A DNA stretch of 64,000 bases from Dimorphilus gyrociliatus (taxonomy: Eukaryota; Animalia; Annelida): the NCBI GenBank assembly GCA_904063045.1, contig CAJFCJ010000019.1, positions 3,540,684 to 3,604,683 of the forward strand, given 5' to 3'. Shown piece after piece: positions 22,468 to 50,994 of the stretch. Positions within the stretch are counted from its first letter, which is position 1. Every line of letters starts with the position of its first letter. A model generated the notes under the pieces. That model ran no database searches. It was not told where the DNA came from and saw only the letters and a list, made by a program, of their open reading frames with translations. A program made the position numbers and the translations under genes.

Positions 22468-23151
22468 CAATATATACTGTATATAGATATATGGTTTATC
22501 TCTCTTGTCTTTCTTCCATTCGTAATAACTTCTTTATATTCAGATAAATAGAAAACAATATGTTAATTTTATGAAATGACTAGCATACTTATTTGCTATA
22601 CATATAGATATATAACTATAATTATATTATATATATATATACTGTATTTATTATACAGTATAAAGGACAAGAAGACTAGATTTCGTCGGTAAATTATTAA
22701 ACGATAAATGATAAATAAGATAAGGCAAAAATATTATGCTATAAATTTACAATTATTATGTTTCTTTCTCTTATTTTTTCTATTAATAGCCTTAATTTTT
22801 TTTATGTATGAATAAATGATGAGTAAAACTTTTTATTGGTGCTAATTAAAACGATAAACATTTCTAATTATTTTGTCTAAATTCTAAAGTTCGCCGAATT
22901 TATTATGAATAATCTTTTCGCTTTTGCCTTAATGAAAAGTTTTAGGCCTACTATAACATATTTTACAAATCGGTAGCTAAAGGAGAAAAACTTTATTTAA
23001 TAAAACTTTTTATATATTTAGAAAGTAGGGTAAGTCTAAATATGGCGAGGATTTAAATTTTTTGTTCGCTTTGTTTGCTAGCGCTACCCAAGAATATTTT
23101 ACCAAATTCTAACCAGTTTTCAAAGTTAAAGAGTGTTGTAAGTGAGGGAAA

Positions 23152-24064
23152 ATGCCTATCAAAAGAAAAAAGTTCAATTCCAGATTCCCAACGGTTAGAT
23201 TAAAAGAATTAACGTCATTGTATTGGATTAAACTAATAATTGCTTTGATCTTTAAAACAGGCTAGAATAAAGAAGATTATGCAGACAGATGATGATATTG
23301 GTAAAGTGGCTGCTATTGTACCGGTTGTAATCTGTATCCTTTTCATTGTTATTTAATCAAGTTACTTTTAAACGTAAATTCCTTAAGTAAATTTAAAGCA
23401 CGAGCCCTAGAATTGTTTATCGACGGCTTGGTAAAAAAATCATATGAACAAACAAAATCCAGAAATGCAAAGACGCTCACAACGTCTCACATGTAAGCAT
23501 TAATTAAAAGTATTACTTCAGCCTAACTAGTTTTTCATGGTTTATTTTAGAAAACAAGTAATACACGAAGAAAAAGGGTTTGACTTTCTAAAAGATCTCG
23601 TTCAGAATGTACCCGATCGATCCGCCGAAGATGAAGACACAAAGACCAGACAGACGAAACGCAGTTTGTCCAATGCGTCTGTAGGATCAGAAGGAGGCGT
23701 ACCCACTAAAAGAAGGCGACCTAAGAAAGTACAAGAGGTAGAATTTTTACCTTTAGATTCAGTTTATTCATTTAGAAATAATTTGTTAACTTGTTAACAT
23801 GTTTTAAATTTATTTTTATTGGTATATTAGTCTAAGAATAAGTGTTTTAAATTGTTAATTCAGAGTAGCTCAACTTGCACTGCCACCTCAACACCATCGT
23901 CCTCACATTCAGATTTGGAAGAAAACAAAGAGGATTTACTAGGGTAAAATATCAATTAGTAAAGAGAGACGTTTCTAAAGATTTTAAACACATGTAGAGT
24001 AAGCAAAACCGACGAAGATTCTAAAAGTGAGCAGGAAGAAAGTGACGATGATGATTATGAATAA
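23152..24064 (+). CDS. DRAP1: Dr1-associated corepressor (NC2 alpha); multi-exon; intron 2 (23334-23398) is U12-type
   Basis: MPIKRKKFNSRFPT|ARIKKIMQTDDDIGKVAAIVPVVI|SRALELF...AKTLTTSH|...FDFLKDLV histone-fold sequence; acidic C-terminus ending at TAA 24062-24064. Confidence 0.95.
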
Positions 24065-24137
24065 TTGTTAAAACTAAGAGTTTTAAAAATGACACTTAAG
24101 ATCTATTGTTCTTAATATACCTAAGTTATTAGTTAAA

Positions 24138-25159
24138 TTATTTTGTTTTTGAATTTCTTATCCAAACAGTTACGTGGCTTACGGTCCATTGGTGCTTTCT
24201 TTCCGTTTCACGAATAGTAAACGGAAGTTCCATTTCATGAACCAAATCGAAATAATCTCCCAATTGTTCTTGCAGTCCAGTTAAACCAACAATCGGTTTT
24301 CCATCTCGTACAAAACCTCCTATCCAATTTTCCTAAAAATAATTAAGAAATATTTCTTATTCTATTTTTAGACAAGCAGGTTTGAAATGAAAAACTTACA
24401 GCCGGTGTATACTCCCTTAGAAACGTATATGGGGAAGTTAACACCAGAATGCCATCAGTAACAACTAGGTCAGCCAAGCGTCTTAAAAAGTATTGAGGTG
24501 AATGAAGGCGACATATTAAGTTCGCAGCCAAAACTACAGAAAATTGACCTAAATCCAAGGGCAAATTGCATGCGTCTCCCCGTCGGAATTCGGCTTTTCC
24601 TCTATCCTGTAAAATGAATAGCTAAAAAGAACCACACAAATTTTAAATAACTAACAATTTTTGAATCGACAATAGCTTGATAAGAATCTTCCAAATCTCC
24701 TATAGAACAAACAGAATATCGTATGGAGCCGCTTCCTTTGAGAATATTACAGGCATCTACAAAAGATTGACTATAGTCAATTCCAACAACTTCATCCAAG
24801 AAGTTACACATTTCGAAGGTTGATCTACCAACAGCGCAACCAATGTCAAGACCTCGTTTTAGTTGTAAAGAGGATTTTTCCAATTGAGATTGGAAAAAGT
24901 TGCCGCAAATATCTGCACACTTTCTTGGGAAATCGTGCCCATTTGTTGGCCCATTTGGGGCGAGTATTAATTCTTTTACAGAGCCATAATGAAATAGTAA
25001 ATACTCATTTAATAACTTTCGACTTTCGTACTGATTGTTACGTTGTTCCCTTTGTTTCTCTTTCTGTTTATAATAGTAGCTCGTTAGGGAGAAAGTTCCC
25101 ACACTTGCAGCAACTGCAGCTGCGCAGCCAAGTAGTATATTACGATCAGTATTAGACAT
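24138..25159 (-). CDS. Stand-alone SAM-dependent methyltransferase homologous to the OvoA C-terminal domain (putative 4/5-mercaptohistidine N-methyltransferase); about 301 aa; 3 exons
   Basis: Exons 25159-24656, 24606-24400 and 24332-24138. Motifs: YESRKLLNEYLLFHYG, LDIGCAVGR (SAM motif I), GDACNLP, VLAANLICRL, TSPYTFLREYTP, NWIGG and PFTIRETERKHQWT. The N-terminus is hydrophobic. Confidence 0.88.
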
Positions 25160-25645
25160 TATTACTCTGGAGGTCCTATTATTTGACCGCTTAAAGATAC
25201 AGTCACATGACAACAAATATGGCTGATCATTGGTGTGGTACCTGTCTAATTCTTTTTGATAAACATACCTTGAATTAAAAATCTAAAACTGTTACATAAA
25301 ATAGTGAATATTTAAACTGCACCTGTATTTAAATCGCACAGAAACATTAGTGTAAATAAACGGAAAATTTCCTATTGAAAACCGACAGCATCTTATATGA
25401 AAATCTTACAGTTGTCTCTATATTTTCATGCTCAACTTTCAACATTGACTAATTCAATAAAAACGGAAAAGAAATATTCAATCAACATACATATTTATAA
25501 TTTCTTGAACAACAATGACTAACATAAATATTACAAAATACCGCTTTGTTCTTCATAACATGGAAAAATTTTCTTTGCGGTCAAAGTCGATACATAAAAT
25601 TATACGACTAAACAGTTAACGTGGTTAAAAGCGGTAGATTATAAT

Positions 25646-28666
<3,021 letters not shown>

Positions 28667-48445: not shown

Positions 48446-49351
48446 ATCGAAATAAATCTCCCTTTTTCTCATCAATCCCGCAAAGGAACCAATTGAAGAG
48501 AAAAGCAAAACAAACCTAGTCTGCACAGCAACCTTGTCCTCTTAAGGAAATAAGTTTATTTTTAATTTTGCAAAAGATAGCAACAAAAATAACATAAAAG
48601 TTAAAAAAAAAGAGGAAAAAAAATACAAACCGTCAAAAAGGAAGAAAACTTTTTAAATTGAAAATGACATAAAGATTTTCTATTTCCTTATTCATGTATT
48701 ATTATCTTTTAAAATATCTCATGTTTTTTATTCAATATATACTAAGGTATGTTATTATCCTATTATTAAAATAAGAAGAAAACAGACAGAAGTATGTATG
48801 TACGTGTGGTTGTGTGTATGTATATATGTATGTATGTATACTGTATATATGTGAATAAATTTTATGGATACGTATATGCATTACTAAAGATTTTGTGACT
48901 GCATATTGTATTATGGGAAATATAGAATATTAATTTTATATAGTTTGTAATACATTACAAGTACATACTGTATTATAGAGTAAATTCATACGGAATTTTT
49001 TCCCATTTATCTATAGTTATCTTACTTTCTTTTTGCATATTATCTAATATTTACAAAACAGAAATTATAGACTTACTTACGTTGTCAAGTGTTCAAATAA
49101 ACACTAATATAAGTCCCTAAAGCAATTGTTTGTAACTTATTGGCTTATAATCATTGAATGATTACATAGAAAGAGGTCTTTGTTAGGAAGATTTGATAAC
49201 GTCATTCAATCGTTCTTTATCTACGTAATTACCGTATGTAGAAGGTACGTTTTTAATTAGGAGTAACAAGGATTTTACTAATACTCTCAGGCCAAAAAAA
49301 TTAAATAAAAGGCTTGTGAAACGTATTCAAAAGCTTATTTTCAAAAAAAAA

Positions 49352-50994
49352 ATGTCATCACCGCCCGCTTTTGGTAAAGAATTAAGGGAGCAAGAATTTT
49401 ATCTTACTTCCGACTATGCCCTACTCAACAATGGATCGTATGGAGCAGCCCCAAAGCGAGTAATCGCTGTCAAACACCAGTTAGCAGTTTCTACAATAAT
49501 TAGTTTGCAATTATAGAATATTCAAAATTTAAATAATTTAATTAGACATGAAGAGGATATGGAAAAAAATCCAGATAACTGGTACGCAAGAATACGACCA
49601 GATTTAGAAGCTGAAGGTTTGAGAAAGTTAAGTGAATTCGTTGGCGCTAAAGTTGAAAATTTAGCATTCGTTGAAAATGCAACAAGAGGTATGAAAAATT
49701 ATTTGTAACACATTTACTATTAACGTAAACTTAACAATAGGCTGTAACGATGCTTTAAAATGTCTAAATCTCCAAGCTGGTGACGGTATACTTATAAATA
49801 ACTTTACATATCTGGCAATACAGAACGCTGTCGAATATATTAAAGATTTCAACGGTATATCATCAATCGCCACCAGATTTGATGTATTTGAACTTTTCAT
49901 CACGCTTTTCCAGGTGTAACCGTTTTTAAGATTGAGTTAAAATTTCCTTTGAATAGTTTTGAAGATTTAGTAAGGACATTCACAGAGTTTTTGGATGCCC
50001 ACACCAGCATAAAGGTTGTTGTTTTAGGTAATACTTTTACTTTTTTTTATAGGGAAATTCCTTTGATATATTTACGATATTTTTGATTATTTAAGATCAT
50101 ATTTCTTCTATGCCTTCCCTTCTATTTCCTGTGAAACAACTTGCTGAAGTATTTCGTGCAAGAGGCATAAAGACTATCGTTGATGGGGCTCATGTTCCTA
50201 ATCAAATAGATGTTAATATTGAAGATTTAAAAGTTGACTTTTACATAGCTAATCTTCATAAATGGACATTCGCAAGTCGTGGTTGTGCTTTTATTTATGC
50301 TGCAGAGGAAATGCACAACACCGCTAAACCTGTAGTAACCGCCCTTTACAATTTTGGTTTCCCAGGCGATTTTACATGGCAAGGAGCAAGAGATCATTGC
50401 ACTTATTCATCAGTTTCTGAAGCTTTCAATTTCATAGAATGGTTGGGTGGAAGGGTAAATAAACGAAAATATTTTCCCAGGTGTTAGGGGCGGAAATAAG
50501 CTTATTTATTTATTTATTTCTATTCCTCATAGACAAGAATTGAAGAATATACTAAAGATTTGGGAGATTGGACTGCAAATGAATTAACAAGTACATGGCA
50601 AACTGATATGTTACCAATTGGTAATGAATTAGTGCCTAACTGCTTGAGAACTATTAGAATACCAGACACGAAGGCTTTTCCAAAGACTCCAGAAGGAACA
50701 AGCTTATTGGTAACTGCACTGAGGGAGCTATATAAGATAAGAGCAAACATAGGATACTTTAGATCTTTGGTAAATGGTATATTTTCGAATAGCAAGTTTA
50801 TTTAAAATCATTTACGCTTTCAGAACAACATGTACGTTCGTGTAAGCTGTGCCGCTTACGTGGATAGAGAAGATATTGCAAAATTTAGAGATGCAATGAT
50901 GGAACTAAAAGATTTAGAACCAGAAGATCAAAAAATCATTGACATGAAAAACATCAAGGAGGACCGAAGTTTAGATGATTTTCTTTACGATTAA
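49352..50994 (+). CDS. PLP-dependent class V aminotransferase-fold C-S lyase (Egt2/EgtE hercynylcysteine sulfoxide lyase, L-cysteine desulfhydrase, isopenicillin N epimerase family); multi-exon
   Basis: LLNNGSYGAAP, FVENAT, DHISS.P, VDGAH, NLHKW (PLP lysine codon 50260-50262), WQGARD and YVRVS; stop TAA 50992-50994. Confidence 0.9.

What the first reader, a model, noticed from the sequence alone, without database searches (positions are those of the whole stretch)
24138..25159. Free-standing OvoA-type thiohistidine methyltransferase with an N-terminal membrane anchor
Seen: a complete 3-exon, ~301-aa gene whose motifs (YLLFHYG, LDIGCAVGR, GDACNL, AANLICRL, SPYT..EYTP..WIGG, PFTIRET.RK) follow the C-terminal methyltransferase domain of OvoA (TIGR04345-type). 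It has no DinB/FGE sulfoxide-synthase domains, and AP1G1 occupies the upstream space. It opens with a hydrophobic stretch (ILLGCAAAVAASVGTFSLTSYYY) followed by basic residues (KQKEKQR). Known: animal OvoA is normally one fused sulfoxide synthase/methyltransferase. Inference: this may be a separate, organelle-anchored (mitochondrial outer membrane or ER) N-methyltransferase for 5-thiohistidine or a related imidazole, implying a split or extended ovothiol-type pathway.
Basis: partly seen in the sequence, partly recalled or inferred. Interest (0 to 1): 0.75.

Follow-up and report, generated by a model that had tools for sequence, protein, structure and literature searches.

The report
Membrane-anchored OvoM-type thiohistidine methyltransferase gene
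This small marine worm carries a real, spliced and expressed gene for a membrane-anchored enzyme closely related to the bacterial enzymes that add the final methyl group to the antioxidant ovothiol. The same unstudied gene occurs in nearly every animal group known to make ovothiol, so animals probably have a second, separate methylation enzyme in that pathway.

Summary
A 3-exon, 301-aa gene lies on the minus strand at 25159..24138. Spliced RNA contigs confirm both introns exactly, and no exon is spliced onto the upstream AP1G1 gene.

The protein belongs to the OvoA-C-terminal/OvoM/OvsM methyltransferase family:
- The three exons score 70 + 72 + 54 bits against TIGR04345 and cover the whole profile.
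- Orthologues score 225-255 bits against a cut-off of 170.
- The closest solved structures are OvsM, OvoA and OvoM (E 1e-71 to 3e-79; TM 0.93 for an orthologue model).
- The window holds no DinB or FGE domain.

The gene is not peculiar to this genome. About 295-aa orthologues with the same N-terminal helix and basic flank occur from sponges to sharks, and in Creolimax. None from insects, nematodes or bony vertebrates was among the best 120 hits, which matches the published distribution of OvoA. They form a eukaryotic stand-alone clade (99/94) separate from every OvoA-fused domain sampled. All are annotated as uncharacterised, and I found no paper on them.

The most likely function is a cytosol-facing, mitochondrial-outer-membrane or ER-anchored N-pi methyltransferase of 5-thiohistidine. 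Substrate and location are inferred, not shown. A "split" pathway is unlikely, because an earlier, unchecked note reports an ovothiol synthase elsewhere in this genome. A parallel or extended pathway remains open. Apart from the first readers' notes, the scan had no earlier finding on this gene.

The parts
24138..25159 (-). Whole coding region (3 exons, 2 introns) of the 301-aa stand-alone OvoM-type methyltransferase
   Evidence: Searches give the translation. One search gives spliced RNA contigs; tblastn with the Patella orthologue hits the three exons at E 1.6e-72.
24656..25159 (-). Exon 1, residues 1-168: start codon, membrane anchor, N-terminal helices and SAM-binding half of the domain
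   Evidence: TIGR04345 positions 1-102, 70 bits. Donor GTTAGT.
24607..24655 (-). Intron 1 (49 nt, phase 0, between codons 168 and 169)
   Evidence: the joint 24605->24655 (cut +1) is seen in X1 and X6. The position is shared with Lingula, and Capitella has an intron near it. The dinophilid relative L004 also shares it.
24400..24606 (-). Exon 2, residues 169-237 (GDACNL, AANLICRL, SPYT motifs)
   Evidence: TIGR04345 positions 115-181, 71.9 bits.
24333..24399 (-). Intron 2 (67 nt, phase 0, between codons 237 and 238)
   Evidence: the joint 24331->24399 (cut +1) is seen in X1 and X6. The position is shared with Lingula and L004.
24138..24332 (-). Exon 3, residues 238-301 plus the TAA stop (24138-24140)
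   Evidence: TIGR04345 positions 183-241, 54.4 bits.
25070..25138 (-). Hydrophobic segment, residues 8-30 (ILLGCAAAVAASVGTFSLTSYYY): predicted single membrane-spanning anchor
   Evidence: the best 19-residue Kyte-Doolittle mean is 1.83, starting at residue 8. An equivalent segment is present in nearly all animal orthologues; residues 9-41 of the Tubulanus orthologue model form one continuous helix.
25040..25069 (-). Basic flank, residues 31-40 (KQKEKQREQR)
   Evidence: net charge is +2 in the 12 residues after the hydrophobic window and 0 before it. Orthologues carry mostly +1 to +6 after it.
24147..25036 (-). Methyltransferase domain, residues 42-299 (introns included in this span)
   Evidence: 362 bits against the profile of animal orthologues, envelope 42-299; 45 of 48 family-wide conserved positions are kept.
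24824..24850 (-). SAM-binding motif I, LDIGCAVGR (residues 104-112)
   Evidence: G107, C108 and G111 are invariant in animal, fused and bacterial stand-alone members.
25160..25645 (-). 486-nt spacer between the AP1G1 stop codon (25646-25648) and the methyltransferase ATG; holds the AP1G1 3' UTR and the methyltransferase 5' UTR/promoter
   Evidence: the X6 contig runs through it unspliced, the X1 contig of the methyltransferase ends at 25182, and the AP1G1 contig of related run X3 ends at 25305.
23997..24137 (-). 3' UTR, at least to 23997; overlaps the 3' end of the convergent plus-strand gene
   Evidence: X6 record 13 starts at 23997. Spliced plus-strand contigs (X6 record 11, X1 record 1) run to 23943 and 24100.

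Best explanation
The gene encodes the Dimorphilus orthologue of an ancient, pan-metazoan (and wider eukaryotic) stand-alone methyltransferase. [quoted passage not shown]

Proposed mechanism. [quoted passage not shown] That is the last step of ovothiol A synthesis. A single N-terminal helix (residues about 8-30) followed by a basic cluster holds the enzyme on an organelle membrane with the catalytic domain in the cytosol. The most likely membrane is the mitochondrial outer membrane, with the ER as the alternative. The enzyme acts beside, not instead of, the fused OvoA.

Shown here: gene structure, splicing, family membership, conservation of the SAM and family motifs, conservation of the anchor, vertical inheritance, purifying selection, and a phyletic distribution matching OvoA.

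Inferred: substrate, methylated atom, topology and organelle.
For: Family membership:
- TIGR04345 hits across all three exons. Orthologues score 225-255 bits against a cut-off of 170.
- The profile of animal orthologues hits OvsM 9bxh at 3e-79, OvoA 8khq residues 434-706 at 1.3e-75 and OvoM 9bxl at 1e-71. The next hit is at 6e-08.
- The AlphaFold model of the closest orthologue (pLDDT 95.4) matches OvoM and OvsM at TM 0.93 and 40% identity. The next fold, NNMT, is at about 0.5.
- OvsM methylates 5-selenohistidine at N-pi and does not methylate histidine (10.1101/2024.04.10.588772). The PDB titles name OvoM as the 5-thiohistidine N-methyltransferase of ovothiol biosynthesis.
- The window protein keeps 45 of 48 positions that are at least 85% conserved in animal, fused and bacterial members alike, including motif I and the GDAC, NLIxRL and IRETxRK motifs.

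Anchor:
- It is conserved in about 90 animal orthologues. Hydrophobicity is moderate (Kyte-Doolittle mean mostly 1.0-1.8), the following 12 residues carry mostly +1 to +6 net charge, and the stub before it is roughly neutral.

Inheritance and selection:
- Animals form one clade (98/88), and the window protein sits inside an annelid + nemertean clade (98/98). A eukaryotic stand-alone clade (99/94) holds none of the 22 OvoA-fused domains.
- Both introns are at positions shared with Lingula.
- Against a related species, dN is 0.067 with synonymous sites saturated.

Link to ovothiol:
- Orthologues occur in sponge, placozoan, cnidarian, annelids, nemertean, brachiopod, molluscs, echinoderms, hemichordates, amphioxus, tunicates and elasmobranchs. 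None from insects, nematodes or bony vertebrates is in the best 120.
- That is the same pattern as OvoA in PMC4768315.
- OvoA is mitochondrial in a diatom and is predicted to be so in animals (PMC9890322).

Expression: spliced contigs are present in an RNA run.
Against: - No activity, substrate or localisation has been measured for any eukaryotic member.
- Animal OvoA already carries a methyltransferase domain with conserved SAM-binding residues (PMC4768315). An identical activity would therefore seem redundant, yet this gene has been kept for hundreds of millions of years. That argues for some non-redundant difference in compartment, substrate or partner.
- The window protein and its nearest relatives replace a glutamate conserved in 87-97% of all three groups with I or V (residue 153). 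They also replace G219 with D and R80 with K. Whether residue 153 touches the substrate could not be checked, because the structure paper is not held.
- Typical metazoan OvoA methyltransferase domains could not be fetched, so their relation to this clade is untested.
- The hydrophobicity rule for outer-membrane versus ER anchors comes from my own knowledge. No targeting predictor was run.
Confidence: 0.55

Rival explanations
1. Same family and chemistry but a different job. The protein is a neo-functionalised paralogue that methylates another thio- or seleno-imidazole, or another position. Candidates are 5-selenohistidine (giving ovoselenol), a thiohistidine-containing peptide, or the alpha-amino group of ovothiol A (giving ovothiol B/C). 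OvoA's own domain would then perform the N-pi methylation of 5-thiohistidine.
For: - Animals keep both a fused OvoA methyltransferase domain (PMC4768315) and this gene, which suggests non-redundant roles.
- The eukaryotic stand-alone clade is separate from all fused domains sampled.
- OvsM (selenium pathway) is the best PDB hit at 269 bits, against 257 for OvoA and 244 for OvoM.
- No enzyme for ovothiol B/C or other 5-thiohistidine derivatives is known in eukaryotes (PMC12631010 abstract; PMC8433421).
- The window lineage has lost a nearly invariant glutamate at residue 153.
Against: - 45 of 48 family-wide conserved positions are kept.
- The PDB score differences between OvsM, OvoA and OvoM are small.
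- The gene is present in lineages reported to make only ovothiol A as well as in those making B or C. A B/C-specific role therefore does not fit its universal distribution.
- No selenosugar genes are known in animals (my own knowledge; not tested).
Confidence: 0.3
2. The protein is a non-catalytic or regulatory relative. It would be a membrane tether or partner that recruits OvoA or binds ovothiol or SAM without turnover.
For: - In the OvoA crystal structure the methyltransferase domains form the dimer core (PMC10696552), so a free domain could in principle pair with OvoA.
- The anchor would place such a complex on an organelle.
Against: - All SAM-binding and family motifs are intact.
- Purifying selection acts over the whole domain.
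- Nothing suggests an eroded active site.
Confidence: 0.07
3. The gene is not independent. The exons would be the 3' part of an AP1G1 read-through or fusion transcript, or a recent bacterial transfer specific to this genome.
For: One contig of run X6 runs continuously from AP1G1 exons through the 486-nt spacer into the methyltransferase. Bacterial stand-alone homologues are abundant.
Against: - The spacer is unspliced in that contig. It contains the AP1G1 stop and further in-frame stops before the ATG, so no fusion protein can result.
- The X1 methyltransferase contig ends at 25182, and the AP1G1 contig of related run X3 ends at 25305.
- Contigs across two genes do not show a single transcript.
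- Intron positions are shared with a brachiopod, and the phylogeny follows animal relationships. Orthologues are stand-alone genes with different neighbours in Capitella and Lingula.
Confidence: 0.03

Closest known systems
OvoM, stand-alone 5-thiohistidine N-methyltransferase of Sulfuricurvum sp. (PDB 9BXL/9BXM/9BXN; Ireland et al. 2025, Structure 33:528, cited in PMC13603875)
   Same: Single-domain protein of the same family. It shares 40% identity and TM 0.93 with the orthologue model, scores E 1e-71 against the animal profile, and has the same SAM and family motifs.
   Different: It is bacterial, about 245 aa, and has no N-terminal membrane anchor. According to the Chlamydomonas preprint's citation, some OvoA proteins lack the methyltransferase domain. 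Animals, by contrast, are reported to keep a fused OvoA as well.
OvsM, 5-selenohistidine N-pi-methyltransferase of the ovoselenol pathway (Halomonas utahensis / Marinimicrobium koreense; PDB 9BXH/9BXJ/9BXK; 10.1101/2024.04.10.588772)
   Same: It is the best sequence match among solved structures (3e-79) and matches the model at TM 0.93. It is a stand-alone enzyme that methylates only after the chalcogen is installed.
   Different: It acts on a selenium substrate and is clustered with ovsA, senB and senC in bacteria. It is soluble and has no anchor.
C-terminal methyltransferase domain of OvoA (TIGR04345; Erwinia tasmaniensis, Hydrogenimonas thermophila 8KHQ)
   Same: Same family model, with every exon aligning in order. 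It scores E 1.3e-75.
   Different: In OvoA the domain is fused behind DinB and FGE-sulfatase domains. Here those domains are absent from the gene and from the whole window. In the tree, the animal proteins sit in a eukaryotic stand-alone clade that excludes all 22 fused domains sampled.
CARNMT1, animal carnosine N-methyltransferase
   Same: It is an animal SAM-dependent enzyme that methylates an imidazole nitrogen of a histidine derivative, and it gives a weak structural match (TM about 0.6).
   Different: It belongs to an unrelated sequence family (14% identity), is soluble, and acts on carnosine. It is a functional analogy only.
Signal-anchored mitochondrial outer-membrane proteins such as TOM20 and TOM70 (my own knowledge)
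   Same: They have a short N-terminal stub, one moderately hydrophobic helix, and a positively charged flank on its C-terminal side, with the bulk of the protein in the cytosol (pattern measured).
   Different: There is no sequence relationship. Localisation here is untested, and the same pattern also fits some ER anchors with the N terminus in the lumen.

Membership tests
OvoA-C-terminal / OvoM / OvsM methyltransferases (NCBIfam TIGR04345) | Score above the curated cut-off (170 bits) with end-to-end coverage of the 242-position model | tested here: met
   The window protein could only be scored exon by exon: 70 + 71.9 + 54.4 bits over positions 1-102, 115-181 and 183-241. Eight orthologues scored whole give 225-255 bits over positions 1-242. 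The window protein scores 362 bits against the profile of animal orthologues.
OvoA-C-terminal / OvoM / OvsM methyltransferases (NCBIfam TIGR04345) | Intact class I SAM-binding motifs (motif I DxGCAVG, acidic residue after strand 2, GDAC) | tested here: met
   D105, G107, C108, A109, V110, G111, D128, D179 and A180 are all present.
OvoA-C-terminal / OvoM / OvsM methyltransferases (NCBIfam TIGR04345) | Family-specific motifs outside the SAM site (YE..EYLxFHYG, FPxRC, NLIxRL, SPY/F, WxGG, IRExxRKxQ) | tested here: met
   45 of 48 positions conserved at 85% or more in animal, fused and bacterial members are kept. The exceptions are K80 for R, I153 for E and D219 for G.
OvoA-C-terminal / OvoM / OvsM methyltransferases (NCBIfam TIGR04345) | Fold of the solved members | tested here: met
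   Tested on the closest orthologue (Tubulanus, 59% identical), not on the window protein itself. The model has pLDDT 95.4. TM by target is 0.93 to OvoM and OvsM, with rmsd 1.7-2.1 Å.
OvoA-C-terminal / OvoM / OvsM methyltransferases (NCBIfam TIGR04345) | SAM-dependent N-pi methylation of 5-thio- or 5-selenohistidine | not testable with these tools
   This needs an enzyme assay. The substrate-contact residues from the OvoM/OvsM structures could not be read because the paper is not held.
OvoA-C-terminal / OvoM / OvsM methyltransferases (NCBIfam TIGR04345) | Co-occurrence with a sulfoxide/selenoxide synthase (OvoA or OvsA) in the same organism | tested here: inconclusive
There is none in the window. 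At phylum level the family's distribution matches that of OvoA (PMC4768315).
Bifunctional OvoA (5-histidylcysteine sulfoxide synthase) | DinB-like and FGE-sulfatase domains N-terminal to the methyltransferase | tested here: not met
   Pfam finds only methyltransferase domains in the exons. tblastn with three OvoA N-terminal halves finds nothing in the window beyond the linker and methyltransferase start. The upstream space is occupied by AP1G1.
Single-pass signal-anchored membrane proteins (N terminus out, catalytic domain in the cytosol) | One N-terminal hydrophobic helix of about 19-23 residues with a positive flank on its C-terminal side, conserved in orthologues | tested here: met
   The Kyte-Doolittle 19-residue mean is 1.83 at residues 8-26, with +2 net charge after it and 0 before. 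The pattern holds in about 90 animal orthologues. The orthologue model has one continuous helix at residues 9-41.
Single-pass signal-anchored membrane proteins (N terminus out, catalytic domain in the cytosol) | Demonstrated membrane insertion and organelle | not testable with these tools
   No targeting predictor or experiment was available. Mitochondrial outer membrane versus ER is an inference.

The most novel reading that the evidence does not exclude
Animals and other eukaryotes run ovothiol-type chemistry with two methyltransferases. In this reading the conserved, membrane-anchored OvoM-type enzyme does something the fused OvoA domain does not. It could be the real N-pi methyltransferase acting at the mitochondrial surface, with OvoA's domain mainly structural. 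Or it could make a second, so far unassigned product such as ovothiol B/C, a seleno-analogue or a methylated thiohistidine peptide. Together with the Egt2-like C-S lyase 24 kb away, this would fill in missing animal steps of the pathway.
Probability: 0.3. Interest if true: 0.75.

Novelty: new variant of a known kind. Interest (0 to 1): 0.55.

Why it matters
Ovothiols are among the strongest natural thiol antioxidants and matter for fertilisation, development and stress responses in marine animals. In animals, only OvoA has been tied to their synthesis. The lyase step and the enzymes that make ovothiol B and C are unknown.

A second methyltransferase of the ovothiol family is conserved from sponges to sharks, carries its own membrane anchor, and is lost where OvoA is lost. 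That makes it a concrete, testable candidate for a missing or compartment-specific step. It also shows that the stand-alone OvoM/OvsM type, described only in bacteria in 2024-2025, has an old eukaryotic branch.

The gene is small, the anchor is easy to remove, and the bacterial assays already exist. The key experiments are therefore straightforward.

Tried and rejected
1. Fetching typical metazoan OvoA sequences, including this genome's own, to place their methyltransferase domains in the tree.
   - The representative search listed no named animal OvoA among its best 150.
   - A profile of 15 OvoA proteins returned only bacterial and protist OvoA in its best 120.
Whether the stand-alone clade is sister to the animal OvoA domain stays untested.
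   - The only long 'animal' hit (Pomphorhynchus, P0230) proved to be a gene model joining a myosin fragment to a methyltransferase. It is not an OvoA.

2. Reading the OvoM/OvsM structure paper to map substrate-contact residues. The paper is not held. The OvoA structure paper does not describe the methyltransferase site.

3. Conserved neighbourhood. Capitella and Lingula show unrelated neighbours and no AP1G1 or pathway genes.

4. Naming the members of the second eukaryotic clade. No names are on record.

5. Horizontal transfer and AP1G1 fusion were considered and rejected (see the rival explanations).

6. The spliced 301-aa protein has no reference. It was therefore not sent whole to NCBIfam, to structure prediction or to the large searches. 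Exons by reference, orthologues by id and local scripts were used instead.

7. No canonical AATAAA or ATTAAA was found on the minus strand in the spacer. The exact AP1G1 3' end is therefore not placed.

The single read-laying run used 4,001 letters.
Full report
**The thing itself**

On the minus strand, an ATG at 25159 opens a reading frame interrupted by two short phase-0 introns. Exon 1 is 25159..24656 (168 codons, donor GTTAGT). Exon 2 is 24606..24400 (69 codons, donor GTAAGT). Exon 3 is 24332..24138 (64 codons plus TAA).

Contigs of public runs laid on 23000-27000 show exactly these two joints, 24333-24399 and 24607-24655, with GT..AG on the minus strand. They appear in a coral metatranscriptome (X1, on record as RNA) and in run X6, whose contigs are spliced.

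One X6 contig does run continuously from AP1G1 exons through the 486-nt spacer into exon 1. That stretch is unspliced, however. It contains the AP1G1 stop (…NNFPPPTWQ*, 25646-25648) and an in-frame stop at 25285, with no in-frame ATG before 25159. The X1 contig of this gene ends at 25182. The AP1G1 contig of a related organism (X3) ends at 25305. The two genes therefore most likely have abutting or slightly overlapping transcripts, and they cannot encode a fusion protein.

**Family**

- Each exon matches NCBIfam TIGR04345 (ovoA_Cterm, 'putative 4-mercaptohistidine N1-methyltransferase') in order: 70, 71.9 and 54.4 bits over model positions 1-102, 115-181 and 183-241 of 242. Other methyltransferase models score at most 20 bits.
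- Pfam sees only generic class I methyltransferase domains.
- Eight orthologues scored whole reach 225-255 bits against the cut-off of 170.
- A profile of 16 animal orthologues finds three solved relatives: OvsM (5-selenohistidine N-methyltransferase, 3e-79), full-length OvoA (residues 434-706, 1.3e-75) and OvoM (5-thiohistidine N-methyltransferase, 1e-71). The next hit is at 6e-08.
- An AlphaFold model of the closest orthologue (Tubulanus, 59% identical to the window protein) has mean pLDDT 95.4. It superposes on OvoM and OvsM at TM 0.93 (by target), rmsd 1.7-2.1 Å and 40% identity. The next fold, NNMT, is near TM 0.5.
- No DinB or FGE-sulfatase domain exists in the gene or anywhere in the 64-kb window.

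**What is known about the relatives**

OvoA's C-terminal domain methylates 5-thiohistidine to ovothiol A (Naowarojna et al. 2018, as cited). OvsM is a stand-alone N-pi methyltransferase. It methylates 5-selenohistidine but not histidine (10.1101/2024.04.10.588772). OvoM is the stand-alone ovothiol enzyme of a Sulfuricurvum species (PDB titles; Ireland et al. 2025, reference found, text not held).

**Not a peculiarity of this genome**

A search with exon 1, and then with the orthologue profile, returned about 295-aa proteins from these groups:
- a sponge (Geodia), Trichoplax and Nematostella;
- annelids (Owenia, Capitella, Lamellibrachia), a nemertean and Lingula;
- many molluscs, including freshwater and land snails;
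- echinoderms, hemichordates, amphioxus and tunicates;
- at least ten elasmobranch species;
- the ichthyosporean Creolimax and Euglena.

All are labelled 'uncharacterized protein' or 'Methyltransferase type 11 domain-containing protein'. The ESM Atlas cluster is likewise named 'Uncharacterized LOC100180046'. No insect, nematode or bony-vertebrate protein is among the best 120, despite the very large number of such genomes in the database. This is the distribution published for OvoA: present from sponges to cartilaginous fishes, and lost in nematodes, terrestrial arthropods and Osteichthyes (PMC4768315).

I found no paper describing the animal stand-alone gene.

**Evolution**

A maximum-likelihood tree of 89 methyltransferase domains (LG+G4; ultrafast bootstrap / SH-aLRT) gave these results:
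- animals form one clade (98/88);
- Creolimax is their sister (94/88);
- a eukaryotic stand-alone clade of 38 sequences has 99/94 support and holds none of the 22 OvoA-fused domains sampled, which included the Cyanophora protein and one from a cluster with Bigelowiella members;
- the window protein groups with Tubulanus (100/88), inside an annelid + nemertean clade (98/98).

Both introns of the window gene lie at positions shared with Lingula (168|169 and about 238), and Capitella has an intron near the first. A genomic contig of a related species (L004, Logan) has the same three exons and is 89.7% identical in protein. Between the two, dN is 0.067 while synonymous sites are saturated (pS 0.75), so purifying selection is strong.

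The gene is therefore old, vertically inherited and constrained. It is neither a recent fission of OvoA nor a bacterial transfer. One caveat applies: typical metazoan OvoA domains could not be retrieved. None appeared among the 150 best representatives, whereas protist and bacterial OvoA domains did. That argues against a close relationship but does not prove it.

**The anchor**

The window protein has a 19-residue window of mean Kyte-Doolittle hydropathy 1.83 at residues 8-26. The stub before it is neutral, and the following 12 residues carry a net +2 charge (KQKEKQREQR). Nearly all animal orthologues show the same design, with hydropathy mostly 1.0-1.8 and a flank charge mostly +1 to +6. Many lophotrochozoans and deuterostomes also share G(I/V)DH(K/R) and STYK motifs. 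In the orthologue model, residues 9-41 form one helix ahead of the globular domain.

By the positive-inside rule, the catalytic domain should face the cytosol. Moderate hydrophobicity plus a basic C-terminal flank is the signature of signal-anchored mitochondrial outer-membrane proteins such as TOM20 (my own knowledge). An ER anchor is the alternative. OvoA is mitochondrial in a diatom and is predicted to be mitochondrial in animals (PMC9890322), which makes a mitochondrial surface location attractive. The location remains unproven.

**Active site**

Of 48 alignment positions conserved at 85% or more separately in animal, OvoA-fused and bacterial stand-alone members, the window protein keeps 45. 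These include motif I (LDIGCAVGR), D128, GDAC, NLIxRL, SPY, WxGG and IRETxRKxQ.

There are three exceptions. K80 replaces R, which is conservative. I153 replaces a glutamate found in 87-97% of each group. D219 replaces G. The related dinophilid keeps K80, V153 and D219, and Tubulanus also has V at position 153. These are therefore stable lineage features rather than decay. I could not determine whether residue 153 lines the substrate pocket.

**Reading**

Family membership is close to certain. The most likely activity is SAM-dependent N-pi methylation of 5-thiohistidine at an organelle surface. The main doubt concerns redundancy. Animal OvoA already carries a methyltransferase domain with conserved SAM-binding residues, so long-term retention of a second enzyme implies some difference in place, partner or substrate. 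That is why I give a rival (another thio- or seleno-imidazole, or another position) about 0.3.

An earlier, unchecked note reports an ovothiol synthase elsewhere in this genome (s1-083341). Earlier follow-up notes name the organism as the annelid Dimorphilus gyrociliatus. I did not verify this directly, but the gene's placement among annelids fits it.

**Context worth noting**

About 24 kb away on the plus strand there is a class V aminotransferase gene (49316-50994). Its 125-aa exon matches the ergothioneine C-S lyase Egt2 at 7e-11 and related 'class V/cysteine desulfurase' structures at 7e-12. This partly supports another first-reader note (s1-083307). It is a candidate for the unknown animal lyase step, though 24 kb in this compact genome does not make a cluster.

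**Verdict**

I file the gene as a eukaryotic, membrane-anchored variant of the OvoM/OvsM/OvoA-C-terminal methyltransferases, which is a new variant of a known kind. Interest is moderate to good, because the family is unstudied in animals, tracks OvoA across phyla and is easy to test.

Noticed in passing
window 49316-50994 (+): Multi-exon class V aminotransferase gene. The 125-aa exon at 50110-50484 hits Pfam Aminotran_5 and, among solved structures, 'class V/cysteine desulfurase' entries (7e-12) and the ergothioneine C-S lyase Egt2 (5v12/5uts, 7e-11). It is a candidate for the unidentified animal OvoB-like lyase and lies 24 kb from the methyltransferase.
   Followed up: partly
window 25160-25747 (-): One contig of run X6 runs unspliced from the last AP1G1 exon through the 486-nt spacer into methyltransferase exon 1. 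This suggests read-through or overlapping UTRs. No canonical AATAAA or ATTAAA is present on the minus strand in the spacer.
   Followed up: partly
window 23134-24100 (+) and 23997-24137 (-): A convergent, spliced plus-strand gene ends within about 75 nt of the methyltransferase stop codon. Contigs of the two genes overlap over roughly 23997-24100, so their 3' UTRs are antisense to each other.
   Followed up: no
window residues 80, 153, 219 of the protein (about 24920-24922, 24701-24703, 24454-24456): Three positions conserved in at least 85% of animal, fused and bacterial family members are changed: R to K, E to I and G to D. The related species (L004) keeps K, V and D. The nemertean orthologue also has V at position 153. 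The effect on substrate binding is unknown.
   Followed up: partly
L002 10001-13486 and 22225-23486 (Lingula anatina, LFEI02000255.1): Two copies encoding the identical 298-aa orthologue lie about 12 kb apart, each followed by a CDKN3-like phosphatase gene. This is either a segmental duplication or an assembly duplicate.
   Followed up: no
P0230 (Pomphorhynchus laevis KAI0988625.1): The gene model joins a myosin-head fragment to a family methyltransferase domain. That domain falls outside the animal clade in the FastTree (with P0164 and P0264). It may be a separate origin in acanthocephalans or a misassembled model.
   Followed up: partly
P0133, P0173, P0194, P0197, P0201, P0202, P0231 (unnamed, probably protist, stand-alone homologues): These share a motif of the form VRS(T/V)(A/T)(A/S)SGS just before the domain, preceded in several by basic, presequence-like N termini. 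It may be a mitochondrial import and processing site. The longer ones form their own clade (97* SH-aLRT in the quick tree).
   Followed up: no
N termini of animal orthologues (P0002-P0015, P0274-P0343): The anchor is not just hydrophobic. Lophotrochozoan orthologues share G(I/V)DH(K/R) before the helix, and they and many deuterostome orthologues share (Y/F)STYK at its end. This hints at a specific partner or targeting signal.
   Followed up: no
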